Positions 4,321 to 62,700 of a stretch of 64,000 nt of DNA are shown one piece after another (position 1 is the stretch's first letter; every line of letters starts with the position of its first letter). The translations under genes and the position numbers were made by a program. Source of the DNA: Podarcis erhardii (Eukaryota); NCBI GenBank assembly GCA_964252035.1, contig OZ176204.1. One strand, 5' to 3'. Under the pieces are notes generated by a model. The model was not told where the DNA came from. It was given only the letters and a program-made list of their open reading frames with translations, and searched no databases.

Positions 4321-7300
4321 ATTCTATTGAAAAGTAAGTAGATACTGGTGTTGGAGGGTGGGGCTGTGGCTGTGTGTGTACAGTACAGGAAGCCCCCGTT
4401 TACATACGTTCAATATGTGCACCACTGAGCATTGCGGCACACCCAGTAGTGACCCAGAAACACATATTTTTGCCATTTTGTCACCCCCCTCAGTGATGAC
4501 ACTCGGGGCGGACCACACCCACTGCACCCCCTTCCTATGCCACTGCACTGATGGTGCCTTTTGTCTAGTGTGGGTAGCCTTAATCATGAGAGATAACTCA
4601 AGGCATTTGTAGGAGTCCTCAACTTTTATTTGTCAAGGGGCATGTTTGGAAATTGAATAAACTGTTGTAGCCACTATAAAGTGCCAGTTTCACACAAGAA
4701 AAAACTGGAGATGCTGTGAATCCCCCTTCCCAAAAACACAGACTTGGTGTACCCCAAGCAAATAAAGCACAGGAAAAAACACAGTCAACATTCTCCAAGA
4801 AGCTAAAAAACTAAATTTAAAAAAATTAAGAGGGCAGGAGGATTGGGGGGCACCAAGTCAGGTGCCTGAGAGTGCTGTATTGCCCATTGTTTTGCACTGA
4901 GAACCCCAGATTATACCCTTAGCTACCGTATGATTTTATTTATTTGTATTTCTTATCTGCTTTGTTTGCCATAGTTCTAGGCTGGGTTATAATAAGTAAT
5001 ATGAGGCTAGCATATAAATCTATATAAATAACAAATGCTTTACTCACATAACAGCAATTCATTATGTTATCCATATATTTATCTTCTCTTAAAAACTTCT
5101 GTTTGCACATGATACAGGCATCATGTGATGTTTTAAAGATGCTCATCCATTTTCTAATGATTGGTTGACATCCTCACCTGAAGTTTTTAAGATAACTCAG
5201 TGGATTTGATGTATGAACTTGTGCTAAGCGAATGAATGGTATCTTCTGTTCATAGAGTGTAGTAAAATCGAGACTTATATAAACCTGTACAGTACTAACC
5301 TTTTAATGTAGTAGAAGTGGCCTTGGGTCAGGTATCCCTCTGTAGCTTGGGGCTTCTATTCCTAGCTACAGAGATCATTCTCAGAGCCCTGGAATTGTTA
5401 GATTAGAAGATTCTTTTTCCTGGGTTTGGGTTTCATGTTTAAAGTCTTTCATCAGTTCATAAGTTTGGAAGCTCTTATTTGTGTTTTTATTTTATAAAGG
5501 TGGCCGTGGTGGCTGCCACGACGCCCAGCTGTTAAGTGAGTGAGTGGTGTTTGTACTATCAGCGGCAGGAACACCATGCATTCACCCGGGGTGGGGGGGA
5601 GAGAAAGAAAAGCTCCCCAACGTCCTTGATAATCAGAAAAATTAGCAAGGACCATTGTGAAAAGCCCTTGAAATGAAAGCAGTACGTGGGTTAATGTTTC
5701 AGCATGATAAATCTCCCCTGGTTTAAAAGGGATGGACTGGATGATAACGTTTTTCAATTAGCCACAAGAAGGTTGTTAGATGCGTCACAGCTGGTGATTA
5801 AAATGTTGTATGGGGGAAAGTGGGTGGGTGAGGGTGGGTGGGTGGGTGGGAAGGAGAGCAGAACGCTCTGGAAAGAAATAAAATGCACAGATCAGGTACC
5901 CTTGATATAGGTTGCAGAGGCTTCTTTACCTAACTTGATTGGATTCAGATAGTGAAGAAGGTTGCTTTTAAAAAATGTATAGTACTTCCAAAATTCCATA
6001 CTCTGAAGGGCTAAAATTCTGCCTTGCTCTCCCATATAGAGTATATTAATCCAAAAGACATCATCAAAAACAAAGAAAATCAAGGGACTTGTAGGTTTGA
6101 TTGCCTATGTATTTGGCTTTTTTAGAATTGTGTACAAAATCTACCCCTCCTCTTTACAAGCCCCTTGATTCATAAACTATTTTTTTTCTGGCTCAGATTT
6201 CCCTGTGTGTTCAGAGTAGACTAATTTCTACCAACCACCCTGCATTGGGTGACAAATGGGTGGAAGCACAAGACTTGTTCCAGATTATAGCCAATGCTTT
6301 TGTTGTTCTGATTCATAAACTAGCCAGCCTGAAACAACACAGGCAACACAAACTGGCCTTAGTTTTGTTTGTTGGTTGCATTTTCTGCATGAAAAAAACC
6401 ACATTGATGGAAAATTTTATTCAGTTTGAAGTGGGTCTCCCCCTTTTTAAAAAATAATCAGCAAGAGATTCAGGAATAAAAGACATTATTGGTGTTCTGA
6501 AAATGCATTTAAGGGTGAAACTAGTGTGTTTTTCTTCTTCCTCAGCCCATCCAGGTGTGGGTTGCAGTTTTTCAAACTAACCACCTGTGTTTTTTGGGTT
6601 GCTATGAGGAGGTCTGGACCACTGTTCATAAGGGGTGTTTATGCACAGAGGTGATGTGTCACTTCTTCACTGACCTTTCTAAAGCCTCTGCAGCCCAGGC
6701 TCAAAACCATGTCCATCTTGTCCATTCAAACTCCTTGGTTTTTGTTGCCCCCTCAGTCTGAAGGGGAGAGGAAGTTCTGCTACAGCTGGGTGCTGGGACT
6801 TCTGCTGCTGATAATCTGTTTTGTGAGTTGGCTGCTGAAAAGCATAAGGGAGAGGGAGAGAACAGTCTCCCTCTTGATGTATATAAAAAAAAACCAGGGC
6901 TGGGTTTTATAAGTTTATAGCTATGTCTTTTTTTTTTACAGAGCTATAATCGTGGTGCTTAGAGTGATCTGAAAGGAACAGAAACACTTAGCCTTGAACT
7001 TTTGTTCTGCTTCTTCTTCTTGTGCCTCTGAGGTACAAAACATACCTGTAAACTTATACTCTGTCAAACTGATTTACCAGGAGGCTAAATGGAGATGGAA
7101 AGGAAACTTGGGAGGCAGTGGGTGATTAATTGGGTCACACGCACCCCTCTTATTTGGATATACAGCAGCTCAGTTAGATGGATTCCAAACAGTCTGTTCT
7201 GTAGCTGGGGAACATGGATCCTTTTTGGTCATATTAAGGAAGTGGGAAATAGGGGGGTGTTTTGTGTGTTAAGTAGAAGATTTTGGTGGTTATACAAATA

Positions 7301-8759
7301 GGGGCCAAACTGAATGGCCTGAACTTCAAGAACTACATTTCTCAGGTAAACCCTCCAAATCCCTACAAATTGAAGATTACTGTTGTTTGCTATTGTAGCT
7401 AATCTCCTGCCCCCACCCTAAAAATCACCAGCATTGCTCAGAAATTTTAAAATGTTCTTTAGCAGCCTGTGTGCATCCTTCAGAAGAAAACAAACAACAA
7501 CAACAAACAGACTGTATATGTGCATGTAGGGATTTGTGCACACATACTAATTGAGAACAGAACACCAGCCAGTGACAGCTCTGTGCAAATAGACATGTTT
7601 CAGCATCCAGCTATGCAAATAGCTGCACTGCAGAGCAAAATCTGAAAAGCATTAATTGTGGCACTGTGACTGTTGCATGGCAACAGTTGTGTTTGAACAA
7701 ATGACAGCTACTGCCCCTTGATTTCTCTCTCTCGTACTTAGTGACAAACTGGAATAAGAAGCAATGATGGCTGCCCTGGGGAAAGCTGTGGCAGGTGCTA
7801 TAAGAGCCCCAAAGTCAGGAGGCAGAGAGGTGAAATCTGTTGCGGGTGACCTTCAGGCTCTTAAAATTATGTGCACAACAGAAGAGGAACAGAGCTCCTT
7901 GATGAATTGGGGGGGGGCTTTATGGGGGCTAAGATGTGTCAGATCAACAAGGTAAAGTAATAAAAAAGGATAGCAAAAATAAACTACCCTCAATTTCTAA
8001 TGAAAGATGTGTTTATACTGGGATTTTTAAAAGTTCGTATTTTTAAAAAATGTGCAGGAAAATCTATGCAAGCTGGAGGCTCTCAAGAGTTTTGGAAAAG
8101 TGGATCCTGCAAAGAGTTACTTTATCTGCAAACAAGCATATGCAACAACCACCATTTTGGATGTTCTTTTGTTCTTACATAAATGGGAGTTCTTCTGCAG
8201 TGTGTGAGCTTGGCTGATCAAGATCCAGATTTGACATCCCTACATGCATCAAGGCTTGCCAGGCGACAACCATGTGAATCCTTTTGTTACTTTAATATTG
8301 CTGCAGCTCTGAAGGAGGATGCAGCTTCAGTTTCCACACTCACACTTCCCCCACCTGCTGCAGCCAGAGAAACTCTTGTTTTGACACACAGCAGTTGGGG
8401 GTGGAGGGTGCGTAAGAGGCCTAGGAGGAGAAACAGGAAAAGCCACAGCTGAATCCTGTTTAATGGCTGTGGCTCTACCCAAGAGATGAGAAGGTTCTGC
8501 AAGTTGTGACCTAGCGGGGAACCCTACCTGTATCCTAATTGTTGCTAAGAAACCTTTTGACTGCAGTGTCTGGACCAGACTCAGTGAAATGTCATGAGTA
8601 CATCCCTTGTTCATTTTAAAAACTAACTATTAAATGATCTTGAGGTGCTGCTAGACTGTTGCTATTTTCAGGTGGGGTTCAGTCACATACTGCCAAATCA
8701 AGGAGCACAAATGTGGTTGATTTGATGCTCTTGTACATCAGATTACTTAATCTTGTTTT

Positions 8760-29922: not shown

Positions 29923-32900
29923 CTAGGGAAAACATTAGGAAGAGGCAAGTTAGGCAAGGAGGCTCCTCTGCGAAAGCCTTCATTATACATTATGCTTGGG
30001 GTTCTGGTAAAGGTCAACTCAAAAAACTGGGCATTCTAGTATGTATAAGCATACTATGACGAATGATCTTGCCTTCTGAATGGTTAGGGTCAGGTAGAAC
30101 AAAATCTTATCTGTCCCTTATCTGGTTGGCTGGGGGTCCTGCGAAACTGGTCTTGCTTTTTGTCAATGGAAGGAGAGGACAGAGAGGCAGGACGGGGTGG
30201 GGTGGGGGATGGGAATCAAGAATTTGTGGCTCAGTTGCTCATGCTCCCTTACCAAAGTTGTGGCCATAGTGTCTGGAAGAAGAGTGCAATGGTATTGTAC
30301 TGGGATGTACAACACTGGCTGTTCTGTGGGACCATGGAATTTCAAATTCCCATTTATAGCTGGTGCAACAGAAGGGATGGAGGTCTACAGTTGCTAGAAA
30401 ACATACTAGGGGAAGAGGCTGGGCAAGAAATTGCATCTAAGGACGCCCTGGCTGGGGTTTCTTCTGCCCACGGTGGGCATACCTGGCTTAACACAATACT
30501 GGCAGCTTAGGTAGAGGCCTAAGCGTCTTATCAGGGGAGGGCCCTCAGGGGTCCTTAGCTATGGGGCACATGGGAATGTAAGGAAGAAAGGGAGAGGTGC
30601 CTGACCTTGGTCACAAAGGTCGCCATCAAATCCCCCGTTGCATTCACAGAAGGCCTCGCCTGTGTCTGAGATCTGGCACTGACCATGAACACACTGCAAG
30701 CTCTTGCATGGGTTGTGGAGTTCCCCTTGCTGGTTGCACAAGGCTCCCTTGTAGCCATCCTGACACTGGCAACTATAGGAGAGGGCATCAAGGGGCATGC
30801 AGATTCCATGGATGCACCTGTAGAATGAGTGAAACATAAAGCTAAATATATCTGAATTCAAAAGGTTGCAGTTAGGCCACCATCTTCTAGAAGCATCATT
30901 TAACATAGGAAGGACCTGCAAGATTCTCTGTGCACCCTGGCTTCTCCAACATCATCTTAGGAATGCAAAGAAGTGAGAGAGGAGGAGCGTTCTCACTGAC
31001 TCCTCAACTTTCCTTATCCTCCAAACACACAAGTACAGCTTTATTGAGGCTGCTTTAAAGGTGAAGGAGGAGTTGGCATTTGGTATGTGCTGTTGTTCTT
31101 GAACGCTGTTCCCAAACCTATGCCCCTGTGCTGGGCTTTAAGTAAAAGTAAAGGTACCCCTGCCCGTACGGGCCAGTCTTGACAGACTCTAGGGTTGTGC
31201 GCTCATCTCACTCTAGAGGCCGGGAGCCAGCACTGTCCGCAGACACTTCCGGGTCACGTGGCCAGCGCCAGAGCAGCAGACAGAAACGCCGTTTACCTTC
31301 CCGCTATAAAGTGGTACCTATTTATCTACTTGCACTTAAGGGTGCTTTCGAACTGCTAGGTGGGCAGGAGCTGGGACCGAACGACGGGAGCTCACCCCGC
31401 CGCGGTATTCGAACCACCGACCATGCGATCGGCAAGTCCTAGGCACTGAGGTTTTACCCACAGCGCCACCCACGTCCCTTATGCTGGGCGTCCCTTGTGC
31501 TGGGCTTTAGAGGGAACTAATTTCTGTTTTTGTTGCTTCAGTCATAAATGCCCTGTCTGCCCCGCCTCATCAGAGATGAGCAAACAGGAGAGGCAAAATA
31601 CTGCCCATCAGAGCCCACAAGATGCAGTTCCAGTCACACTTAGGAGCACAGGGAGCTGCCTTATACCAGGTCAGACTATGGGTGCGTCTAGCCCAAAATT
31701 GTCTGCTCTGACAGGCAGTGGCTCTGTAGGGTCTCAGCCAGAGGTCACTCCTGATCCTTTCAAAGTGGAAATGCTAGGGATTGAACTTGGCCCCTTCTGC
31801 GTGAAAAGCACATGCTCCACCACTGAGCTGCAATCCCTCCCCACACGCTCTCCATCTTGCACACAGCACTGCAGTGAGAGAAGAAGCCCACAAGGAAAGG
31901 GTGGATTCTGCTGCTGTGTACTCACTTGTGGCCCTGGCAGGGGTTGCTAACGGGCTGGTCGCAATGGGGCCCGACCCAGCCTGGATCACAGTGGCAAATG
32001 GGGCCATGAGGGGTGTTGGGTTGGCAAATGCCATGCAGGCAGTAGAGCTTGCGGCAAGGCTCACACCCGGGCACCACCCCTGGCTTCATCTGTGTCTTAG
32101 TGAAGTCCTGCAGCTCGTTGTTGATGTAGAGGTTGCGGATGCAGCCATGGAAGCTGGAGCCATTCAGGATCTGCCAGAGGCGGAAGGCGGCAGAGTTCAC
32201 ATCCACGGGCATCCCTGCGAAGGGGAGAGCCAGAACAGCAAGGTAAGGGACTGGAAGAGGAAGGAAGAGCAAGGTCCTGGGGCAAAGAGAGATGGTGCTG
32301 GTGGAAGGAAAAGAGCATTCCTTATTCTGGAATGCTGTGTGGAATGTTAAGAGCCACATTCTTCCATTTCTCTCCCCTCTCCCCACTGCCACAGCACCCG
32401 TCGCTCCTCCTCAGTTTGGCACGTGGCTCTTAGTGCCCTGCAGTATGAGCTCAGACACCCCACCCTGGAGAGGAGAACAGAAACATTCCTCTTGCATCAC
32501 TACTATCCAATGGACATGAGCGAAGAAGAGTGAAGGAGTTCTCCATTCAGTTAGTGCCCTCCAGGTGCAAGTATGTAGGTGACAAAGATACCAGCCTCTC
32601 TCACCCCCTTCTCCCCAACTGGACTGGGCCCAAGTCACAGTCCTACCCCCAACATAGAGTGGAGCCTCAGAGTTCAGCGTGTGGGCCTTGCCAAAGCCGT
32701 CCATGGTCATGGGGTCTCCTCCATCGATGGAGAGGTTTACCATCCGCTCAAAGGTCACCAGCTCTACAGTGTGGAACTGCCCGTCATTGATGGTCTCTGC
32801 ACTAGGGAGAGAAGGGAGGTGTGGGATGGGAAAGGCTGGTGGCACCCAACCTTTGGCCTGATATCTGGCATCCACAGCCATCTGGACCCATCCAGCATGG

Positions 32901-44800: not shown

Positions 44801-47800
44801 TTCCCAGATTTCTGCATTCAAACTCTACAGTCTTTTGCATATCTAAGGACACTCTCATGTGAACAGTGGCTTCACAGATTGAACATCCAGCAGATGCAGC
44901 GCTGGTGGCACCTTCAAATCTGCCTTCTCCTTTGGCAACAGCTCTGGGCTGATGACTGCATGTCCTCAGCTAATTCTTCTAATCTCTTCTCTGTCTGGTG
45001 CTGCTAGAAAGGAATCTTGATAAACTGTATCATGTAGGAAGAAGGAAATCTAGCAGTGCACATGCTCTGAAGGCCAGGGAAAATCACAAGATGACCTGCA
45101 GAGCATGGAGTGAATCTTGGAGTCAGTGTGCTTAAGACTTAGACTCAGCTGCATTTCAACAGCCAGCAAATAAAATAAACTGCAAAGGGTCCTTTGGAAT
45201 TCCTTAGGCAGACAGTAAACAAACATTTGAGATGAAAAGTCAGTGAGGTGGGGTCAATGGGGCAGGGGAAAAGGCTATCATTCAGAAAATTCCAGGAACC
45301 ACATATGAGAGAGATGCCAGAAGGGTAATCTACCTCTTTGGGAACTGAAATCAGTTCCTAAAGGACTCACAGTGCCTTAGCAGAAAAGCAAAGCTATTCT
45401 AATGTCCAGGGAAACCAAAGTAAATAGAGAGATGGATGAACTCCAAATCCAAAGTCAGATGGACTAGATGGCGTTTTTAGAATTATTTACTTCACCCAAT
45501 ATCCTGAGCTGAGTTAACTGCACCTTGCTCAAGAGAATCCAGCTTTTTTAGTTGTACGGCATTTGCATTTTAGCGACCCCATAACCAAGGCGGCTAAAAT
45601 CTAAAAACATTTAATGGTTAATTTTAATGCTTTATGCTTCTCACCTCCTCTTCAGCTGTACAAGCTAATATGTTAAGCATAATTTTATGTAATTCAGAAT
45701 GGGTCCTATGCTTCCTCTCAAATTCTCCCTTAGACAAAAAATATTTCTTATCCTCCATGCTAGCTTCTTTGACCATCCTCTTCTTGTTTTTCAGAAGCTT
45801 CTCTGTTTCCATATAGCTCTATGGTATGTGTGTGTTTTAACGAAAAGGCTTTTTTTTGCATTTTGATGGAAGAACCAGGTGGGAGATACAACATCTGGGT
45901 GCCACTCAGCCTTTCTGCACCTGCTTTATTCTCTTTGGTGCTCTCCTGGGAGCCTGAAAACAGAATGGCCACCTGATTCCACAAAGATCTCCTGTACCCC
46001 CAACCAGCCCCTCTGTACTGGTGAAAGGCTGATACCATGTGAGCCAAATCAGTTGATCAGCGTCCACTGAGGGATGAGTTGCACCACTCCCCACCTAGGC
46101 CTGGTCTAAAAATTTCCACAGACATGCTGCACAAATGTCTGAGAAAAGGCCACAGCCCACAGCCCATCTCCTGCCTCTCTGAAAAAAAGACTATGGCAAG
46201 CTCTCGGGGACCCACGCGAGGCCACTTCTTCTCAGATACTTACACCAGCTGTAGGTAACGGAAGGTGGAGAGCTGTCCAGGAACCAGGGTGAATTGGTTG
46301 CCATCCAAGTAGCTGCAAGGACAATGAAGGATGCATCAGAGGTCACAGCAGCAATACAGGAGAGGACTGTTAAACTTCCAACAATGGTGTTCAAAGGACT
46401 CTAAACCTAGAAGCTATAACTAGTGATAAGCACTGTCCCTGCTCCTCTGTTAATGGTGCCAGCTAAGGGAAAACCATCAGAGTTATCTTGTAAGTGCAAA
46501 TGCCTGTATTTCACGCCTGTATTTCTAACAGGGTGGCATACGTGCTCTCCTAAATCTGAAACTATGTTTGTCTCAGGCTGCCTTGCTTTCTTCCAGTTTT
46601 CCAGATGTTTGATTCTAGGGTATCAACATTGGATTCATTAACACTGCAGAGTAATATAACAGTACCACAGGCCCCTTCCACCTGCCACAGAACTCATTCC
46701 CCTAAATAAAAAATCCCTTCAGAGTTCAGTGGAATCCAGTTTTGAACCCACAGAGAATGTGGCATGCACTGGATCAGTGTTTAGCTTTTGAGGATGATCT
46801 GCTGAACAGTGCAAGGTATAAAGCTGCATGCCTCTCACTAGGCTGGTCCCAGCCCCTTCATCCACGGGTGCAACTTGCCAGTGCCCACATTGCCCCTTCT
46901 TCCCGGATGCAGCGTCAGCAGAAGGGCCCAGGCAGCATTACTCACAGCTCTGTGACGTTCTTGGGGATCCCTTTGGGGAGGGATTTCAGGTGCTTGTTGC
47001 TGCAGCGAACAACAGTGTCTAGGCAAGTGCACTCCTGGGGACACTGAGGGCGTGGGAAGCAGCTTGTCTCCTCCTGACCTGCCAAGGCACAAGCCAAAGG
47101 GTTCAAAGTGGAAAGAGACGGCATGGTGATGGAATAGGAGATCTTGAAAGCAGACATTATCCTATGTTTCTCCAGGGAAATCTAGATTTCAGTCTGCCCT
47201 TATATCGCCATTATAAAGTGTCCCACTTTATCAAAGGGCCAAAGGCATCAGCAGCAATTAGAACTGAGAATATTAATCAACTGGTGTGATTAATTCATTG
47301 CAAATAAAACACCGCTCTTAATTGGAAAGAGTGTGAAAGGTCCCTTTGACATCTATGTCCTCCTATTGATTTACACAAGGGTTTCAATTCTCAGAAGCAC
47401 ATGGGAAAAGCTATGGAGCTGTTAATTCCCCCCCCCCCGAACAGCAGCCACCCCTCCACACCCTGCATAGATGCACCATATCAGAAGCTGCTGTTTGGAC
47501 CAGGGCCAGTGGCTTAAGATGATTTGCTAGACAGTTAATGATTTACCTATTTAGTAAAGTGACGCTGTGTTAAACATCTCCAAAAATATTTCCTGCATTA
47601 AGATACTGTACTTATTTATACTGAGTGGTTAAATAGCTGATTAAATTGCCTTGCTTTTAACCAATTAATTGACTTTGGGGGGGGGGACCTTGAGACCACT
47701 CCTAACCACGGCGGCACAGCCCCTTACGTAAGTGTGGACCTGCTGCATGCCTGACAAGATTTGTGCTATGTTTCAGTTTATGTCTATAATAATAATAATA

Positions 47801-50800
47801 ATTTATTATTTATACCCCGCCCATCTGGCTGAGTTTCCCCAGCCACTCTGGGCGGCTCCCAATCAGTATTAAAAACAATACAGCATTACATATTAAAAAC
47901 ATCCCTGAACAGGGCTGTCTTAAGATGTCTTCTGAACGTCAGGTAATTCTTTATCTCTTTGACATCTGATGGGAGGGCGTTCCACAGGGCGGGCGCCACT
48001 ACCGAGAAGGCCCTCTGTCTGGTTCCCTGTAGCCTCACTTCTCGCAATGAGGGAACCGCCAGAAGGCCCTCGGCGCTGGATCTCAGTGTCCGGGCTGAAC
48101 GATGGGGGTGGAGACGCTTCTTCAGGTATACAGGACCGAGGCCGTTTAGGGCTTTAAAGGTCAGCACCAACACTTTGAATCGTGCTCGGAAACGTACTGG
48201 GAGCCAATGCAGATCTCTCAGAACCGGTGTTATGTGGTCCCGGCGGCCACTCCCAGTCACCATGGGCACTGGTCAAGCTCAGCAGCAATTACATTGACAT
48301 GCCTAGCAGTTTTTGTATTGCCTGGTGCCTTCAAACTAGACATGGATGACCACTGCCTACAATCAAGGTGGGGTAGCAGACACCATGTAGACAGCGCACC
48401 TGGTCCTTCAGGGGCACAGTTACCCCATTCAGGACCAGGGAATCCTCCACACCTGCCCGCCTCCTGACCCCCAAAAGCAGTACTTCTGTCTTGTCAGGAT
48501 TCAACCTCAATCTGTTAGCCGCCATCCAACCTCCAACCGCCTCCAGGCACTCACACAGGACCTTCACCGCCTTCACTGGTTCTGATTTAAAGGAGAGGTA
48601 GAGCTGGGTGTCATCTGCATACTGATGAACACCCAGTCCAAACCCCCTGATGATCTCTCCCAGCGGCTTCATATAGATATTAAAAAGCATGGGGGAGAGG
48701 ACAGAACCCTGAGGCACCCCACAAGTGAGAGCCCAGGGGTCTGAATACTCACCCCCCACCACCTTCTGGACACGGCCCAGGAGGAAGGAGCGGAACCACT
48801 GTATAACAGTGCCCCCAGCTCCCAGCCCCTCTAGACGGTCCAGAAGGATGTTATGGTTGATGGTGTCAAAGGCCGCTGAGAGATCCAGCAGAACCAGGAA
48901 ACAGCTCTCACCTTTGTCCCTAGCCCGCCGGAGATCATCAACCAGCGCGACCAAGGCAGTTTCAGTCCCATGGTGAGGCCTGAATCCCGATTGGAAGGGA
49001 TCCAAATGGTCCGTTTCCTCCAGGCGTGCTTGGAGTTGTTCAGCAACCACCCGCTCAATCACCTTGCCCAAGAATGGCAGATTTGAGACTGGGCGATAGT
49101 TGGCCAAATTGGCCGGGTCTAAAGATGTTTTTTTAAGAAGCGGTTTAATGACCGCCTCTTTCAGCGGGTCTGAAATTCACAGAGGGAAGCATTCACCACC
49201 CCGCAGATCCCATCGCCCAGCCCTTCCCGGCTCGCTTTTATCAGCCAGGATGGGCAAGGATCAAAGAGACAGGTGGTCGGTTTCACTCGTCCAAGCAGCC
49301 TGTCCACATCCTCGGAGGTAACAGATTGGAATTGATCCCATGTAACAGGACCAGACAGAACTCTAGCACTCTCCCGCCCTGGCCCTGCTCCCACGGTGGA
49401 GTCTACCTCCTTCTGAATCTGAGCGATTTTATCTGCAAAAAACTTTGCAAAAGCATTGCAGGAGATCTTGGGGTCCCTACCAGGCCCCGGTGGTACAGGT
49501 GGTTCTGATAGATTGCGAACCACCTGAAAAAGTCTCCTGCTGCTGTTTTCTGCAGATGCAATGGAGGCGGTGAAGAAGGCCCTCTTCGCCGTCGCCATTG
49601 CCACTTGGTAGGCTCGACGTTGAGCTCTAACCCGTGTCCGGTCTGATTCAGAATGAGTTTTCCACCACCGGCGCTCTAGCCGTCTCAACGATTGTTTCAT
49701 CACCCTCAGCTCCGGGGAAAACCACGGGGCTGTCCGGGCTCCATGCAATCGGAGAGGGCGCTTCGGAGCCAGACAGTCAATAGCCCTGGTTAACTCCGCA
49801 TTCCAGCGGGCCACCAGGGAATCAGCTGAAAGGCCATCAACTTGGGATAAAGCATCCCCTACCACTCTCTGGAAGCCAATTGGATCCATTAAGTGGCGGG
49901 GGCGGACCATCCGAATCGGTCCCACCTCCCTGCGGAGGGGAAGGGTTGCGGAGAAGTCCGGTTGCACCAGGAAGTGATCTGACCATGGCACTTCTTTTGT
50001 TTCGCTTTTAGTTAATGTCAGATCACCAGCATCCGTAGAGGTAAACACCAAGTCTAAGGCATGTCCGTGGCTATGAGTTGGGCCAGACTTATTCAGGGAC
50101 AGCCCCATGGAGGCCATGCTTTCCACGAAGTCCCGAGCGGCCCCTTGTAAGGTCGTGTCGGCATGGATGTTAAAATCCCCCAGGACAACCAAGCTAGGTG
50201 TCTCCAGGAGCATATCCGCCATGACCTGAAGCAGCTCGGGCAGGGAATCCTTGGTGCAGCGGGGAGGTCGGTACACCAATAGGAATCCTGTACTGCCCCT
50301 ATTGCCCAACTTCCAGAACATGCACTCAGAAAACTGGGTCTTCCCAATAGGACGCCTGGTGCAGACTAATGACTTCCTAAAAATCACTGCAACCCCCCCT
50401 CCCCGCCCACATGACCTGGGTTGCTGTGCGTAAGAGAAACCTGGTGGGCAAGCAGCGGCAAGGACAGGCCCATCTGCTTCATCCAACCAAGTCTCTGTTA
50501 CACATGCCAGATCAAATCCTCCATCCATGATCAAGTCATGGATGGCAGTGGTCATCCATGTCTAGTTTGAAGGCACCAGGCAATACAAAAACTGCTAGGC
50601 ATGTCAATGTAATTGCTGCTGAGCTTGACCAGTGCCCATGCTGGGACAACAAAAAAGGCCATCCCAACTGAGGAAACAGTATGAGAAGAAGAAGACTGCA
50701 AGACATACATGCATGCATACATAAACACACACACGCACCCTAAATCTCCCACAACTTTTCAGAATGGGGCGACCACATCATTTCATTAGTGGCTGCAGTC

Positions 50801-53661
50801 TTCTTTGCCCTTTACAGCAGCCTTTGGGTTCCTCCCACTTCAGCTGATCTGTGTGAGGAAACTCATTTCCATGTGTGAACTGCGACTGCAAGATTTGAGG
50901 GCTGAGGCAGTTTACACACACAGTGCAGCCTGGGCTAATGGACATTCAGCGTTTTCAAAATCTGGCTTAATACATGGCACTCCCATTTCCCGTAATGACT
51001 TCCTGTGTGCCCTCTGTTGGTTTAAATTCATATTGCAACAACTCTGGACAGGGAAAAGGGTTGGACATTTATGGCTTAATGGGAATATCAACCTCGTTCA
51101 ACCACAACAGCCTTCCCAACTATACTACACTGGTCTGCTAGCGGAAACTCAAATAGGGCCTTATGTGGGTCTGTGGGAAGATACACCTGCTATACAATCA
51201 TAGCCTCAGTTTGCATAATTGCTCCCTCCCCATCTTCCTCATCCCCACAGAGAGCCTGTGAGTTACCTTCCTCACACCTGAAGTCGGGGAAGGCCACATC
51301 CTGCAGTGGGATTTGGCGTAGGAAGTCCGGATTATTGCAGCGGGGGTTCCCAGTCACAATCTTCCTCCTACGAAGCCAGTCGCCTAACCAGGCCAGGCGG
51401 CAATTGCAGTTGAAGGGGTTAGCCAGCAGGTTCCTGGGTGGGAAGGGTACAGGAGGGAGATAAATAAACTGGGCAAACACAGGATAATCTAGCAAAGGCT
51501 TGTAGGTAGCAGCCCTCCAAGGTCTTAGGGACAGATTTTTCCAATACTGCTACATAGGAGCGCTTTTGAGAAGCCAAGGATTAAAGTAGGGACCTGCTGT
51601 ATAGAAAGCGTGGGTTCTACTCCTGAGCTATGGAGCCTCCCTACAATCAAGGTGGGGTAGCAGACACCATGTAGACAGCTCTCACCAAGGGATAGAGGAC
51701 TGAGCGTGTTCAGAGGTTAGTTAATAGGTTAGAATTTCCCCGCCTCGCAACTCACAGTGTGGAGAGCGACTGCAACGTGTCAAAAGCCCCAGGTGAGATG
51801 GTGCTGATCTGATTGTCGTACAGTGAGAGGAGGCGCACATTGCGCAGTCCCGTGAAGCTGTCATTGTGGATGCAGTTGATGCGGTTGTTCCTCAGCATCC
51901 TGGAAGGAGGACAGAGAATGGGAAGAAGCCCGTTCTACAAACTACCCCTGGAAAGCCAAAGGAGACTGACAGCATTCTCCACCCTGCTACTCCTCCTGCA
52001 TACTGACAACCCACCACTGCTGCTCTCTCCTATCTTCCCTACCCCAGTTAGGCCAACAACCCCCGTTAGGCCAACTTACAGGGTCCGCAGCCCATCGAGG
52101 CCCCGGAACATGGCGCTGCGCACTGACTCCAGCTGGTTAACCGTCAGGTGTAACTCACTGACTGAAGCTGCCCCTTCAAAGGCCCCATCCTCAATCTCTG
52201 ACACCTTGTTGTTGCTCAGGTTTCTGGGAAAGCAAGGAACATGAAGTGATAGTGGAACACAGGAGCAGGCAGAAAGTTTTCTCAACTCAGTGCGCAGCCT
52301 ACAAGGAGCATTTCTCTCCAACAGAGACAAATGAAGAATATTTGTAGTAGTTCCAACAGCGCTGGTTTTATTTTGCTGTCTTTAATTCTTCTGCAACCTG
52401 CGCCTGCTGAACCCACTTTGAATGTATGCCATATGTTTACTCTGAAGCCTTTGACTTCCTCTAAAAAAATTGTTTCTGCTTCTGAAGGCCCATCGAGTAG
52501 CCCCTGGCAGTCTTGATCAGAATCTTCTCCCTCCCGTGCCTGCTCTTTGCACTGAAAGGAAAGCTCCCACTGATGTCAATGGAAGCTTTATTCTCCTTGT
52601 AAACAGCAGTTGAGGTGGGGCGGGGGGGGGGCAATTCCAGCACTGGGTCTAAGCTCCCCTCACTCCACACCATTGTCCTGATCTGGTTGGCCCCCCTATG
52701 CCAGCTGTTCAACTTTTAAAAATCAACTATGCAACACCAAGCAATGTGACAAAGGTCATCTCTAGTTTGGCCTTTCCATTCTAGGCATACATGTCAGCCT
52801 CTTGCATTAGAAATATCTGGCTCCTGTTGGAATACTCCTGCACTCTAAGCCCTGTTCATATTGCCGCCTCCTTTCCCCCAGATCTTGTGTGCACAAGAGG
52901 TCTTTGGAGTATCTCCTCTGCTATGAGAACCCCTTACCCACACACTCACATTTTCTTTAAGTGTGGGAGCTTCTTAAAGATGCCTGTGGCCTCCAGCACT
53001 GTGATTTCATTGTTGTTCAGCCGCCTGCAACAGAAATAAAGGATTGTAAGCATACAGCTCGGAAAGCAAAGCAGTGAATAAAATAAAATATATGTGTATT
53101 CTAGGCCCATCTCTGAAAACTAACTTTGCATTGCTTAACACATTCTTTCCACTCTGTACTGAGTTAATCCCTGTGTATAAAAATGTGCATATGTATCAGA
53201 ATATAAAGTGTAATCCAAATGGATTGTTCTGCCAGGAGTAAGTATATGGCTTTGAAAGCCAATACACACCAGCTTTCGAAATCAAGCATCTGCAGCCACT
53301 TGTCCACATGAACAATGTGCCCTTTTCCTACACACAGATAATTTCAAAGTATATTCTATATAGAATAGAAATAGAAGGTGAAATGGCCCAATGAAAGACT
53401 CAGTACTGGATAGGGCCAAGGGCCATTCCACTGTGCTTGCATGGAGAATAAATGCTTCATATAAAAGGCTTCAGATACCCGTTTAGTAAACAATATGGGA
53501 TGCTGGGTGCAGTGCAGTGCACTACAGAAGGGAGAGGCACTGGAATGAAATACGCACCAGAAATAGAAGTTCTAAGCTTTGTCAGTGTGTAAGATGAGCA
53601 CTGGGTACAGAAGTTAGGAATCTTAGATGAGTGGCTGAGGCAACCCAGTCAGATGGGTGGG

Positions 53662-59700: not shown

Positions 59701-62700
59701 CAGTCATGGTCTCAGGCAGGTTGGCAGGGATGGCTGTCAGCCCCTTGCCGCGACAGTCCACAATGCCATTGCTGCAGGTGCACATGGCGGGACAGGAACC
59801 TGATGAAAAGCTGCAGATTTGGGTCCTGGTAGCATCCATCTGGCCTGCAGAGAAGAATGCAGAAGCTTAGTGCATCCTCTTTGCATAGGGCTTGCAACCC
59901 ACGGCACTGCAGGGCATCCCTAGCCCTGCCTACCTGTTCTTTGCTTGTGGAACATTGTGGTCTCTTGGGGTTTTGGAATGTGTACTTTCTTCAGGGCAGC
60001 TAGAGAGCCTTTGGGCCACAGCATGCCCTCCTCTCAGCCCCTCTCCACAGATGTTTACACGTAGAGATAAATACATATGCAGGCATATACATATGCAGAA
60101 CTGCTACACAGGTTGATAGTTCAAATCAGCAGAGACAAGAAACGGACAGTGTGATGGGGAGGGCAAGTGCACAAATGAGCATGAGACAGAAAGGGCAGCA
60201 TGGTGCACCATTTCACAACGCTGAGGAGGAAAACTGCATAAAGAGCACAGGCTGGTGCAGGGAGCAAGCGGGCATCTTTCAAGATGGCAGCTTCCAGCAC
60301 TAATGGTTTGATAGCTTCACACTGTCAGAAATAGAAAAATGCAGGATAAAAGGAGACAATGCTTTTAAAAGAATTTCTGTAGAATGAAAAGCAATTTCTG
60401 CAGTCCAGGCTGCAGTCATGCAACCACCATGGCCTGCACACGAGACACAAGAGCTCCCGAAACTAATGTGTCGTGGTAAGAGGGTCTGTGTTCATTTGAG
60501 AGACCAATGGTCTCTTGTGGCAGGTTTCACTTTGGTTCCAGGGCTGATATGCCTTGAATCTGAGGGCAGAAGGGGCCTCTTTCTGGTGATTCTGGGGGTC
60601 TGCAAAGCTTCCTGGAACCCCATAGATGCCACTCACCTGAACAGCTGAATTCATTCTTCTGAATCTCTGCAACATTGAGGCCACGGAGGGCAGCAGGGCC
60701 GGCACACTGTGTGAAGAGCCCAATTGTGGGGCGCTGGCGCAGCCACTGGGAAAGCCAACCCAAATGGCAATCGCAGAAGAGCTGGTTGGAGTGCAAGCGG
60801 CTGTAGGGACCCAGGGGAGGAAAGGTTGGGGGAGGGGGAAGAAACATCAATCACTGTCTTTCCACAGCTACCTCTTGAGACACCTGCATAGATACTGCAG
60901 GTAAAGCCATTTCTAGAGAGACAGACTTAGGTTTACTGAGCTGGAATGAAAATGTGGGGACATTTCCTGGGAAGGAGAGTCCAGTCCAATAGGGATCTGA
61001 AGCTGTGGGATTTGGGCCTTAGTACTGTGCATTCTGGGATACGGGTGGCACTGTGGTGTAAACCACTGAGCCTTGGGCTTGTCGATCGGAACGTTGGCAG
61101 TTCGAATCCCTGCGACGGGGAGAGCTCCTGCCAACCTAGCAGTTCGAAAGCATGTCAAAGTGCAAGTAGATAAATAGGTACTGCTCTGGTGGGAAAGTTA
61201 ACGGCATTTCCGTGCACTGCTCTGGTTTCGCTAGAAGCGGCTTAGTCATGCTGGCCACATGACCCGGAAAAACTGTCTATGGACAAATGCCGGCTCCCTC
61301 GGCCAGTAAAGCAAGATGAGTGCCGCAACCCCAGAGTTGTTTGCGACTGGACGTAACTGTCAGGGGTCATTTACCTTTACCTCTTTTTTTACTCTGCATT
61401 CCATGGACTGGATTGCTCTCACCCAGTGTCCTGCCCACCACATTAATGCCACCCCTTTCTGTCCCATGATACACCTTGTCATTAAAGGAACCAACAACTC
61501 TATGAACAGAGCTGTGGCTCTTTCTGCCATTGGGGGGGCAGCATCCCACATCTTTGTAGGGCCCCAGGTTCTTGGGATCCTGGGCACAGGGTTAGGCATT
61601 ACCTACTATGAAAACACCAGTGCCAAGAAGGGAGATCTGCAGGACCTAAAAGTGAAAAGTTGCCACCAGGATTCCTTGTATGGACTGGTAGCTCCCAGCC
61701 CACCATGCTTTATGAAATGTCCAGTCTGCGGTCTTCCACCCCACCCCCAATCCCACCCCACTCTTGGGCTGCTTCATCATGTGCTCACAAGGTGCGCAGT
61801 TTGGGCATATGGTTGAAGCTGGAGATGGGGATGGTGCTGATGTTGTTGTTGTTCAAAGTCCTGCAGGAAGGAGGAAGAGGAAGAGCATCAGTGAATGCTG
61901 GAGAGAAACATCTTGTCCTTTCATCTGGCTATGTGTGCAGTGTACACACAAACAAACAACGCTCACAGAATGGCATGTGACACTTCTCAGATTGACAGCA
62001 CATCTTATTTTCAAAATCATTTGCAGCATGGGAGAAGCAAGGGCCAGTTCTAACACACCCCTACAACAGAGGATCTTAGAATGACAGCTCAACAGGTGAA
62101 TTTTAGGGCACCCCTTAGCAAGAAAAGTTACAATGACTAATAGGCCAGCTTCCCCAGGATTGCATACATATTACCTTCATCTGACCCAACACTCCCCTCA
62201 AGCTTGGGAGGAAGGCCCCGCTGACATTTGTAAGCTCAGGACCAGGCTCCAGTGGTTTGCACAAGGGGAGCTACTGGGCTTTGGGTGGTCACTTGATCAC
62301 TTTTGAAACCAGACCAGGTATAATGTTATTTGTTTTGCTTTGTTTTCACCACTGGGATTTAAAAAACCCTGTTAAGCTACAATCCTATGCACAATTGCAT
62401 AGTAATATGGTAGGGCAATTATTACTAATTATTACTGTTGTTGTTGTTGTTGTATTGATTTATCACCCGCCCTTTGAAAACAATTTAAAATTCAACATTA
62501 AAAACAGTTCAAAACAAATTAAATACTGAAGCTAAAGTGACCTATCAACACTTCTCTAGGGAGGGTATCCCATAAAGTAGGGGCCACCACTGAGAAGGCA
62601 CTGGTTCCTGGTTCCCACCAATCTAAATGATCTCAAATGCAGGCCAACAAGTAGGGCTTCTGATATCCACCTTAAAGCAAAGGTAGGTTCATACAGGCAC

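What the first reader, a model, noticed from the sequence alone, without database searches (positions are those of the whole stretch)
48261..48395. LINE ORF2 segment replaced by a 135-bp patch stitched from two nearby loci, one inverted
Seen: 48261-48357 is the exact reverse complement of 50544-50640 (97 bp); 48356-48395 is identical to 51640-51679 (40 bp, SLIT1 intron 19, beyond exon 20). The pieces overlap by CC and the second overlaps the resuming LINE by GC; TCCCAG precedes the first piece in both donor and recipient, offset by 4 nt. The patch sits where ORF2 jumps from DQVR to VTGSG, so roughly 80 codons are missing (estimate from typical L2 ORF2). The inverted piece spans the element's own 5' junction (about 10 nt LINE, filler, candidate TSD and flank), so the event post-dates integration. 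Inference: a break in the LINE was repaired by serial template switching (MMBIR/FoSTeS or polymerase theta) to sites about 2.2 and 3.3 kb away. It leaves a perfect 97-bp inverted repeat about 2.2 kb apart that could fold the pre-mRNA (dsRNA, ADAR editing, sequestering the cryptic acceptor at 50641) or promote inversion of the EN-RT block.
Basis: partly seen in the sequence, partly recalled or inferred. Interest (0 to 1): 0.8.

Follow-up and report, generated by a model that had tools for sequence, protein, structure and literature searches.

The report
Locally templated patch inside a dead L2 LINE
A broken lizard L2 retrotransposon in a SLIT-gene intron lost 244 bases of its coding region and gained 131-135 bases copied from two unique sites 2.2 and 3.3 kb away, one inverted; this is a clean example of a known error-prone copy-and-switch DNA repair scar with no evident function.

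Summary
48261-48357 is the exact reverse complement of 50544-50640 (97/97). 48356-48395 is an exact copy of 51640-51679 (40/40). These are the only near-exact repeats in the 64-kb window.

The host is a young, 5'-truncated, minus-strand L2-clade LINE (about 47786-50555), 95-96% identical in protein to Podarcis muralis copies. It lies in a 4.2-kb intron of a SLIT-family gene.

Four intact relatives have 82 residues between DQVR and VTG. Two other L2 copies have 244 nt there, and none carries the patch.

The 97-mer donor contains L2 nt 1-12, a GG filler, the 7-bp target-site duplication and 76 nt of flank. The patch was therefore made after the 5' junction existed.

Best reading: serial microhomology-mediated template switching (MMBIR/FoSTeS-like repair), a known mutation class.

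Not resolved:
- Timing. A young L2 and a 23-nt flank-templated filler at a Zootoca L2 5' junction keep an integration-coupled origin alive.
- Read-level proof that the assembly is right.
- The dsRNA and inversion consequences, which remain speculation.

First readers flagged similar unverified cases elsewhere in this genome.

The parts
47780..47786 (.). 3'-side copy of the candidate 7-bp target-site duplication (ATGTCTA on the + strand)
   Evidence: Identical to 50558-50564. It abuts the end of L2 homology and the tail.
47786..47888 (-). L2 3' UTR ending in an (ATT)n tail (TAA repeats 47786-47802 on the + strand)
   Evidence: Homology to the Zootoca L2 copy L002 runs to 47786. L002 has the same UTR and a longer (ATT)n tail.
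47889..48260 (-). L2 ORF2 C-terminal part ([14 protein letters not shown]... to the stop at 47886-47888)
   Evidence: Aligns to the C-terminus of P0001, P0005 and P0137. DNA homology to L001 and L002 resumes at 48262.
48261..48357 (.). 97-nt patch piece: exact inverted copy of 50544-50640
   Evidence: 97/97 identity with no extension; pair I1. Absent from the L2 copies L001 and L002 and from all intact relatives.
48356..48395 (.). 40-nt patch piece: exact direct copy of 51640-51679
   Evidence: 40/40 identity with no extension; pair D2.
48261..48262 (.). Junction J1 microhomology CA, shared by the L2 (TG of the Leu codon) and the 97-mer donor; an interrupted match TCCCAG lies 4 nt further in
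   Evidence: Three-way comparison of the window, L001/L002 and the donor.
48356..48357 (.). Junction J2 microhomology CC, shared by both donors (extended match CTGCC / CTCCC, 4 of 5)
48394..48395 (.). Junction J3 microhomology GC, shared by the 40-mer donor and the L2 Arg codon of DQVR
   Evidence: L001 and L002 both read GC at this position and then continue with 244 nt that the window lacks.
48396..49107 (-). L2 reverse-transcriptase part, ending at ...LKDQVR
   Evidence: Pfam PF00078, E = 3.2e-37. 95% identity to Podarcis muralis P0001. One codon is missing in the RVQK-VVG stretch.
49164..50555 (-). L2 endonuclease plus linker ORF (464 aa). It is separated from the RT frame by a 7-bp deletion at about 49175/49176.
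   Evidence: Pfam PF03372 and PF14529. 96% identity to P0121. The 7-nt gap is seen against both L001 and L002.
50544..50640 (.). Donor of the 97-mer: L2 nt 1-12 (50544-50555), GG filler (50556-50557), 5' TSD (50558-50564) and unique flank (50565-50640)
   Evidence: The L2 frame is continuous across 50543/50544: P0121 reads ..[10 protein letters not shown]... The TSD matches 47780-47786. The segment is unique in the window.
51640..51679 (.). Donor of the 40-mer, in the middle of a 322-nt SLIT intron (51434-51755)
   Evidence: Unique in the window.
51267..51433 (-). SLIT-family exon (C-terminal cap of the third leucine-rich-repeat domain) lying between the two donors
   Evidence: PDB 2v70 (human SLIT2 D3), E = 2.8e-26. 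Splice sites read. The exon is conserved in Logan contigs L003-L005.
46946..47078 (-). Next SLIT exon downstream. Intron 47079-51266 (4188 nt) holds the L2, the patch and the 97-mer donor.
   Evidence: ORF and splice sites. Aligned to L004.

Best explanation
This is a real germline deletion-insertion scar in a dead, 5'-truncated L2 LINE. After the element had been integrated, a break or a stalled replication fork occurred inside ORF2. A free 3' end then primed DNA synthesis on short stretches of nearby single-stranded DNA, pairing through only 2 nt each time. It copied 97 nt from the opposite strand 2.2 kb away, across the L2's own 5' junction. It then copied 40 nt from the same strand 3.3 kb away, in the neighbouring intron. 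Finally it re-annealed to the L2 244 nt from where it had left. The net result is that 244 nt were lost and 131 new nt were gained (135 nt counting the shared dinucleotides). This is microhomology-mediated serial template switching of the MMBIR/FoSTeS kind.

Shown: the donors, their orientation, the size of the deletion, the three microhomologies, and that the 5' junction existed before the patch.

Inferred: that there was a break or fork stall, which polymerase acted, the direction of synthesis, and the timing. The interrupted TCCCAG..CA match at J1 hints at synthesis of the window + strand from left to right.

The patch has no evident function.
For: Identity and uniqueness:
- Exact 97/97 inverted and 40/40 direct identity with sharp ends.
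- Donors and patch are unique in the window. They are absent from two other L2 copies and from the flanks of five fetched loci.

Deletion:
- Relatives carry 82 residues / 244 nt where the patch sits.

Junctions:
- Each of the three junctions has exactly 2 nt of microhomology. For blunt random joins, P(2 nt or more at all three) is about 0.004.
- Imperfect longer matches flank J1 (TCCCAG with a 4-nt bulge) and J2 (4 of 5 positions).

Order of events:
- The donor 97-mer contains the L2 start, the filler and the TSD in native continuity. The junction therefore came first.

Against an assembly join:
- A 2-nt overlap cannot arise from k-mer or overlap assembly joins.

Literature:
- Multi-template, direct or inverted templated insertions flanked by microhomology are the published MMBIR signature (PMC8421209).
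- Reverse-complement copies that leave perfect inverted repeats are the published template-switch signature in ape genomes (PMC7954356).
Against: - No reads, no second assembly and no orthologous locus could be examined, so the event is inferred from one assembled sequence.
- The donor spans the L2's own 5' junction. That has only a 1.5-3% chance for a random 97-nt donor within +/-3.3 kb. Both donors also lie on the 5' side. These points sit slightly better with an event tied to integration.
- The L2 is young: 46 of 50 conserved CpGs are kept and there are no in-frame stops in about 2.5 kb. Zero differences in 137 nt therefore does not show that the patch is younger than the insertion.
- Nothing in the sequence identifies a cause for a break at this spot.
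Confidence: 0.55

Rival explanations
1. Integration-coupled origin. The patch was made while the L2 insertion was being completed. After the first-strand cDNA had been joined to the upstream flank, the polymerase making or repairing the second strand left the cDNA template. This polymerase could be the L2 reverse transcriptase or a host enzyme. It copied 40 nt of upstream flank and 97 nt of the junction region, then returned 244 nt further on. The patch would then be as old as the insertion.
For: - Both donors lie in or at the upstream (5') flank, and one is the 5' junction itself.
- Another copy of the same L2 family, in Zootoca (L002), has a 23-nt filler between its TSD and its 5' end. That filler is an exact direct copy of flank 435 bp upstream. 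Upstream flank is therefore used as a template during integration of this family.
- The window L2 is young enough that 0/137 differences is compatible with equal age. Expected differences are about 1-2, giving P(0) of about 0.1-0.3.
- Templated insertions, deletions and inversions at L1 insertion sites have been reported experimentally (PMC11702581).
- Unverified first-reader notes in this genome report a 55-bp inverted templated insertion into another L2 and a SINE carrying an inverted copy of its own flank.
Against: - The patch lies 2.16 kb from the 5' junction, not at it.
- First-strand synthesis is logically excluded, because its template would include its own future junction.
- The best extended homology (J1: TCCCAG..CA) fits synthesis of the + strand, which is the opposite of second-strand synthesis.
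- The support rests on one comparator locus and on unverified notes.
Confidence: 0.22
2. Assembly or sequencing artefact. The junctions exist only in a chimeric molecule (for example an amplification or library chimera) or in a mis-filled gap, and not in the animal's genome.
For: - Perfect identity of both pieces.
- Donor distances of 2-3 kb resemble library insert sizes.
- In-vitro polymerase chimeras also show microhomology and inversion.
- No read-level data were available. Exact-protein look-ups for three ORFs at or across the junctions found no independent contig.
Against: - Three junctions within 135 nt, each with only 2 nt of overlap, cannot come from overlap or k-mer graph joins.
- A single chimeric read would have to outvote the true coverage.
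- The window has no N and no other near-exact local repeats.
- The L2 on both sides is otherwise colinear with other copies.
Confidence: 0.1
3. Fragment capture. A double-strand break in the L2 was closed by end joining that trapped two short free DNA or cDNA fragments derived from the local SLIT pre-mRNA or DNA, one in each orientation. This would be a class 2 templated-sequence insertion rather than synthesis by a switching 3' end.
For: - Both donors lie within the same transcription unit.
- Class 2 TSIs show microdeletion and microhomology and are thought to derive from reverse-transcribed RNA (PMC5110952).
- An active RT family (L2) is present in this genome.
Against: - It needs two independent fragments from within 3.3 kb, whereas published TSIs come from distant loci.
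- The interrupted homologies next to J1 and J2 fit primer annealing better than ligation of pre-formed ends.
- Sequence alone cannot separate this model from the best explanation.
Confidence: 0.1
4. The patch is part of the L2 family itself, or of another repeat family, and was inherited from a source element.
For: None found.
Against: - Four intact protein relatives and two DNA copies have normal ORF2 sequence at this position.
- The patch has no match in the fetched loci.
- The 97-mer contains this copy's private TSD and flank, which a source element could not carry.
Confidence: 0.01

Closest known systems
MMBIR / FoSTeS templated insertions at rearrangement junctions (MMB-TIs; PMC8421209)
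   Same: The inserted DNA is copied from nearby sequence. There are several templates, in both direct and inverted orientation. Every junction has 2 nt of microhomology. The switching strand returns to the original locus with a deletion.
   Different: The donors are 2.2-3.3 kb away. The yeast signature and the MMBSearch tool look within about 100 bp. This is a fixed or segregating germline event in a lizard intron with no copy-number change beyond the patch. Dependence on replication could not be tested.
Short-range template-switch mutations (four-point model; PMC7954356)
   Same: A reverse-complement copy replaces the local sequence and leaves a perfect inverted repeat. The model is agnostic about mechanism.
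   Different: Those events involve a single excursion within one fork, spanning tens of bases. Here there are two excursions, 97 and 40 nt long, over kilobases.
Polymerase-theta end joining with templated insertions
   Same: Priming from 2-nt microhomology, iterative synthesis and dissociation, and a deletion at the break.
   Different: From general knowledge, typical inserts are much shorter and are templated from the immediate break flanks. A 97-nt tract copied from 2.2 kb away is atypical.
LINE integration by-products: twin-priming 5' inversions and templated insertions at L1 insertion sites (PMC11702581)
   Same: Retrotransposon context, a 5'-truncated copy with a short TSD and a filler, and use of flank DNA as template. 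The Zootoca L002 copy shows a 23-nt flank-templated filler.
   Different: Twin priming inverts the LINE's own 5' segment. Here the LINE is colinear, and the inverted piece is flank plus junction placed 2.16 kb inside the element.
Class 2 templated sequence insertion polymorphisms (PMC5110952)
   Same: A 'patch' of foreign sequence at a repaired break, with microhomology and microdeletion.
   Different: Published patches come from distant, often RNA-derived sources. Here there are two local pieces from the same gene.

Membership tests
MMBIR/FoSTeS-type templated insertion | The inserted sequence is an exact copy of a template elsewhere, usually nearby | tested here: met
   97/97 and 40/40 identity to unique sites 2.2 and 3.3 kb away.
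MMBIR/FoSTeS-type templated insertion | Microhomology at every template-switch junction | tested here: met
   CA, CC and GC, each 2 nt, established against two other L2 copies and both donors. P is about 0.004 for blunt joins.
MMBIR/FoSTeS-type templated insertion | Several switches, with direct and/or inverted templates, and a return to the original locus | tested here: met
   Three junctions, one inverted and one direct template, and the L2 resumes colinearly after a 244-nt loss.
MMBIR/FoSTeS-type templated insertion | Origin in a collapsed fork or one-ended break, with dependence on break-induced-replication factors | not testable with these tools
   This requires genetics or replication data.
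Polymerase-theta (TMEJ) templated insertion | Short insert templated from the immediate flanks of the break | tested here: not met
   The pieces are 97 and 40 nt long and lie 2186 and about 3240 nt from the recipient site. The 'typical' size and distance come from general knowledge, not from a test here.
L2-clade LINE | APE-type endonuclease plus reverse transcriptase in one ORF, a conserved C-terminal region, and close relatives annotated as such | tested here: met
PF03372, PF14529 and PF00078. 95-96% identity to Podarcis muralis RT-domain proteins, with colinearity to the C-terminus. C-terminal motif. It was not checked against a repeat library.
L2-clade LINE | Insertion hallmarks: 3' tail and target-site duplication | tested here: met
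   (ATT)n tail, and a 7-bp ATGTCTA at 47780-47786 and 50558-50564. The same architecture is present in L002.
Twin-priming 5' inversion of a LINE | The 5' portion of the LINE itself is inverted relative to its 3' portion | tested here: not met
   The EN, RT and C-terminal parts are all on the minus strand and colinear with other copies. Only flank plus junction is inverted.
SLIT gene (host locus) | Exons encoding SLIT leucine-rich-repeat domains | tested here: met
   PDB 2v70 (SLIT2 D3), E = 2.8e-26. Exons are conserved in contigs from other vertebrates.
SLIT gene (host locus) | Paralogue SLIT1 and the exon 20 / intron 19 numbering | not tested
   No full-length orthologue could be retrieved because of length limits and spent searches. 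The atlas look-up was uninformative.

The most novel reading that the evidence does not exclude
The patch is a by-product of L2 integration itself. In lacertid lizards, resolution of the L2 5' end or second-strand synthesis would routinely recruit upstream-flank DNA as a template. This would leave flank-derived fillers at 5' junctions, as in the Zootoca copy L002, and occasionally internal flank-and-junction patches like this one. Such scars would then be a readable signature of how L2 elements complete integration, a step that is poorly understood.
Probability: 0.2. Interest if true: 0.5.

Novelty: new member of a known kind. Interest (0 to 1): 0.25.

Why it matters
On its own this is a tidy, fully resolved natural example of a three-junction, microhomology-mediated templated insertion in a reptile germline. 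The ancestral sequence can be inferred from sister L2 copies, and both donors are identified to the base. That is useful as an illustration or as a benchmark for template-switch callers, but it is mechanistically unsurprising.

The event lies in a dead LINE inside an intron and has no evident effect on the SLIT gene.

It would matter more if a genome-wide survey showed that L2 or SINE insertions in this genome are enriched for flank-derived patches. That would tie such scars to the integration mechanism.

The 97-bp perfect inverted repeat has a predicted RNA duplex energy of about -200 kcal/mol, and both arms are in one intron. It is a plausible ADAR substrate, but nothing here tests that.

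Tried and rejected
1. Orthologous or empty-site comparison. The SLIT exon ORF found many Logan contigs. The three fetched (L003-L005) come from distant vertebrates. Only the exons align, at 80-85%, and the introns do not. No empty site and no donor orthologue could be obtained.

2. Independent contigs carrying the junctions. Exact-product look-ups for the 464-aa EN ORF, the 125-aa ORF starting in the patch, and the 86-aa + strand ORF spanning all three junctions found nothing. This is uninformative, because ORF callers may never have called these ORFs.

3. Paralogue naming with the protein atlas. The scores were weak and mixed SLIT3-fragment and VLR hits, so the result is unusable.

4. The representative-library search gave many L2-like RTs at 70% identity or less. 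It added nothing beyond the closer Podarcis hits.

5. Other copies of the L2 or of the patch within the window. There are none, only two 40-nt 3'-UTR fragments.

6. L001 could not be used for TSD or filler analysis, because that copy is truncated at both ends.

7. Models rejected:
- Two successive inversions cannot duplicate sequence.
- First-strand (TPRT) template jumping would have to copy a junction that did not yet exist.
- A 'reverse' scenario in which the 5' junction is a copy of the patch fails, because the T-T-A codons are native L2 sequence continuous with I-H-D.

8. Dating the patch relative to the insertion. CpG retention and the absence of stop codons show that the L2 is too young for 0/137 differences to discriminate.
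Full report
OBSERVATION

Reading the three stretches and comparing them by script shows two exact matches. 48261-48357 is the exact reverse complement of 50544-50640 (97/97). 48356-48395 is identical to 51640-51679 (40/40). Neither match extends by even one base, and each piece occurs nowhere else in the window.

The repeat finder reports the same pairs (I1 and D2). A self-BLAST of the whole 64-kb window finds no other near-exact repeat of 40 nt or more. Chance is not an issue. The window contains no N.

HOST ELEMENT

On the minus strand lie three ORF pieces:
- a 464-aa ORF at 49164-50555, with the endonuclease domain (PF03372, PF14529)
- a reverse-transcriptase ORF ending at 48396 (PF00078, E = 3e-37)
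- a 127-aa C-terminal ORF at 47889-48269

The nearest proteins are Podarcis muralis 'reverse transcriptase domain-containing' proteins at 95-96% identity. Next come Zootoca, Varanus, Anolis and snakes. The window is therefore lacertid, and the element is a young member of a lizard L2-type family.

Homology to a Zootoca copy runs to 47786, through an (ATT)n tail. At the other end the intact relative P0121 reads ..[16 protein letters not shown].., whereas the window reads M-TTA-IHDLI. The copy is therefore 5'-truncated at about 50553-50555.

The heptamer ATGTCTA abuts both ends, at 47780-47786 and 50558-50564, with GG between it and the L2 start. This is a short TSD plus filler.

Besides the patch, the copy has a 7-bp deletion at about 49175/49176, which causes the frameshift between the EN and RT ORFs. 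It also lacks one codon in the RT.

The element lies in sense orientation in a 4188-nt intron (47079-51266) of a SLIT-family gene. The exon at 51267-51433 matches the C-terminal cap of human SLIT2 domain 3 (PDB 2v70, E = 2.8e-26). Further exons lie at 51756-51899 and 46946-47078. The 40-mer donor sits in the 322-nt intron between the first two of these exons. I could not test whether the gene is SLIT1, nor the exon numbers.

WHAT WAS LOST AND WHAT WAS GAINED

Four intact relatives have 82 residues between ...KDQVR and VTG.... I fetched the DNA of two other copies of the family, L001 from Podarcis raffonei and L002 from Zootoca vivipara. Both are colinear with the window L2 up to 48394 and again from 48262. 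Both have 244 nt in between.

Neither copy, nor any flank in the five fetched loci, contains the patch. So 244 nt of ORF2 were replaced by 135 nt, of which 131 are new.

JUNCTIONS

Lining up the window, the two other L2 copies and the donors shows exactly 2 nt of ambiguity at each of the three joins:
- J1, L2 to 97-mer: CA at 48261-48262, which is TG of the Leu codon in the L2 orientation.
- J2, 97-mer to 40-mer: CC at 48356-48357.
- J3, 40-mer to L2: GC at 48394-48395, within the Arg codon of DQVR.

For blunt random joins, the probability of 2 nt or more at all three is about 0.004.

There are also interrupted matches. At J1, TCCCAG lies 4 nt from the CA in the L2 and directly before it in the donor. 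A shared 6-mer in such short windows is expected about 0.6% of the time. At J2, CTGCC faces CTCCC. These fit a 3' end of the window + strand annealing to its next template. That is a weak hint that synthesis ran from left to right on the + strand.

DIRECTION AND ORDER

The L2 reading frame is continuous across 50543/50544, and the T-T-A codons are native L2. The TSD at 50558-50564 matches the one at the 3' end. The copy at 50544-50640 is therefore the original, and the copy inside ORF2 is derived.

The derived copy includes the junction-specific GG filler and the truncation point. It cannot have arisen independently, and the 5' junction must have existed first.

This excludes first-strand (target-primed) reverse transcription as the source. 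It also excludes inheritance from a source element. Two successive inversions are excluded too, because the sequence is duplicated rather than moved.

MECHANISM

The anatomy has five features:
- templates within a few kilobases
- one inverted and one direct template
- three switches
- 2-nt microhomologies
- return to the original locus with a deletion

This is the published signature of microhomology-mediated template switching (MMBIR/FoSTeS; PMC8421209). On a smaller scale it matches the template-switch mutations that create perfect inverted repeats in ape genomes (PMC7954356). I take this as the best explanation (0.55).

Polymerase-theta end joining shares the logic. From general knowledge, however, it usually makes much shorter inserts from the immediate break flanks, so it fits less well.

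RIVALS

(a) Integration-coupled origin (0.22). The L2 is young. 46 of 50 CpGs conserved in the two other copies are intact in the window. CpG observed/expected is 0.5-0.7 in the L2 against 0.2 in the flanks. There are no in-frame stops. If the patch were as old as the insertion, only about 1-2 differences would be expected between patch and donors. Zero differences therefore does not date the patch.

Both donors lie on the 5' side, and one is the junction itself. That is a 1.5-3% coincidence for a random later event.

In passing I found that the Zootoca copy L002 has a 23-nt filler between its TSD (CTATTTTC) and its L2 5' end. The filler is an exact direct copy of flank 435 bp upstream. Upstream flank is thus used as a template when this family integrates. 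Templated insertions at L1 insertion sites are documented (PMC11702581).

Against this rival: the patch lies 2.16 kb inside the element, and the J1 homology points to + strand synthesis.

(b) Assembly or library artefact (0.10). It cannot be excluded without reads. However, 2-nt overlaps cannot be produced by assembly graphs, and three switches on one chimeric molecule would have to dominate the consensus.

(c) Capture of two free local DNA or cDNA fragments by end joining (0.10; PMC5110952). Sequence cannot distinguish this from copying. It does need two independent local fragments.

(d) Part of a repeat family (0.01). This is refuted.

CONSEQUENCES

The event leaves a perfect 97-bp inverted repeat with a 2186-nt spacer. 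Both arms lie in the same SLIT intron. The predicted RNA duplex energy is about -200 kcal/mol.

An acceptor-like polypyrimidine-CAG motif does abut the donor arm at 50641 on the gene strand. Editing, masking of that motif and inversion of the EN-RT block remain untested ideas.

OTHER NOTES IN THIS GENOME

First readers flagged elsewhere in this genome:
- a 55-bp inverted templated insertion into another L2
- a SINE with a perfect inverted copy of its own flank
- a tandem duplication with a snap-back templated junction

All are unverified. They are leads for a genome-wide test and are not used as support.

VERDICT

This is a new instance of a known kind of mutation and is of modest interest. 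Its main open question is whether it belongs to L2 integration or to later repair.

Noticed in passing
L002:5493-5515, 5920-5950 and 8088-8095 (Zootoca vivipara OY735918.1): Another 5'-truncated copy of the same L2 family has the TSD CTATTTTC at both ends. Between its 5' TSD and its L2 start lies a 23-nt filler that is an exact direct copy of flank sequence 435 bp upstream. This is a flank-templated filler at an L2 5' junction.
   Followed up: partly
window 49175-49176 and about 48760-48766: The window L2 has a 7-bp deletion relative to both other copies, which causes the EN/RT frameshift. It also has a one-codon deletion in the RT (RVQK-VVG). There are no in-frame stop codons anywhere in about 2.5 kb of ORF.
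   Followed up: partly
window 47889-50555 versus flanks 47160-47785 and 50556-51190: CpG observed/expected is 0.48-0.72 in the L2 but 0.21-0.25 in the surrounding intron. 46 of 50 CpGs conserved in two other copies are retained. This indicates a recent insertion.
   Followed up: yes
window 47424-47439 and 52621-52636: A C10 run and a G10 run with matching AATT flanks form a 16-nt, 94%-complementary inverted pair 5.2 kb apart, straddling the L2-bearing intron. It is probably chance or low complexity.
   Followed up: no
window 31142-31471 and 61043-61380: A 67%-identical inverted pair of about 340 nt. It is presumably two old copies of one interspersed repeat.
   Followed up: no
P0006, P0093, P0099: L2-type RT fragments that are 52-70% identical to the lizard element are filed in public databases under a plant (Tanacetum cinerariifolium) and under Vibrio parahaemolyticus, on contigs of about 1 kb. 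This is most likely vertebrate DNA contamination of those assemblies.
   Followed up: no
L004 (Logan SRR34021268 contig, 2789 nt): A distant vertebrate carries the same four consecutive SLIT exons within 2.5 kb. Its equivalent of the 4.2-kb L2-bearing intron is only about 875 nt long.
   Followed up: no
window 50641-50660, minus strand: A polypyrimidine tract followed by CAG, which looks like a 3' splice site, directly abuts the end of the 97-mer donor on the gene strand. Its TCCCAG is the same hexamer that lies near junction J1 in the L2.
   Followed up: partly
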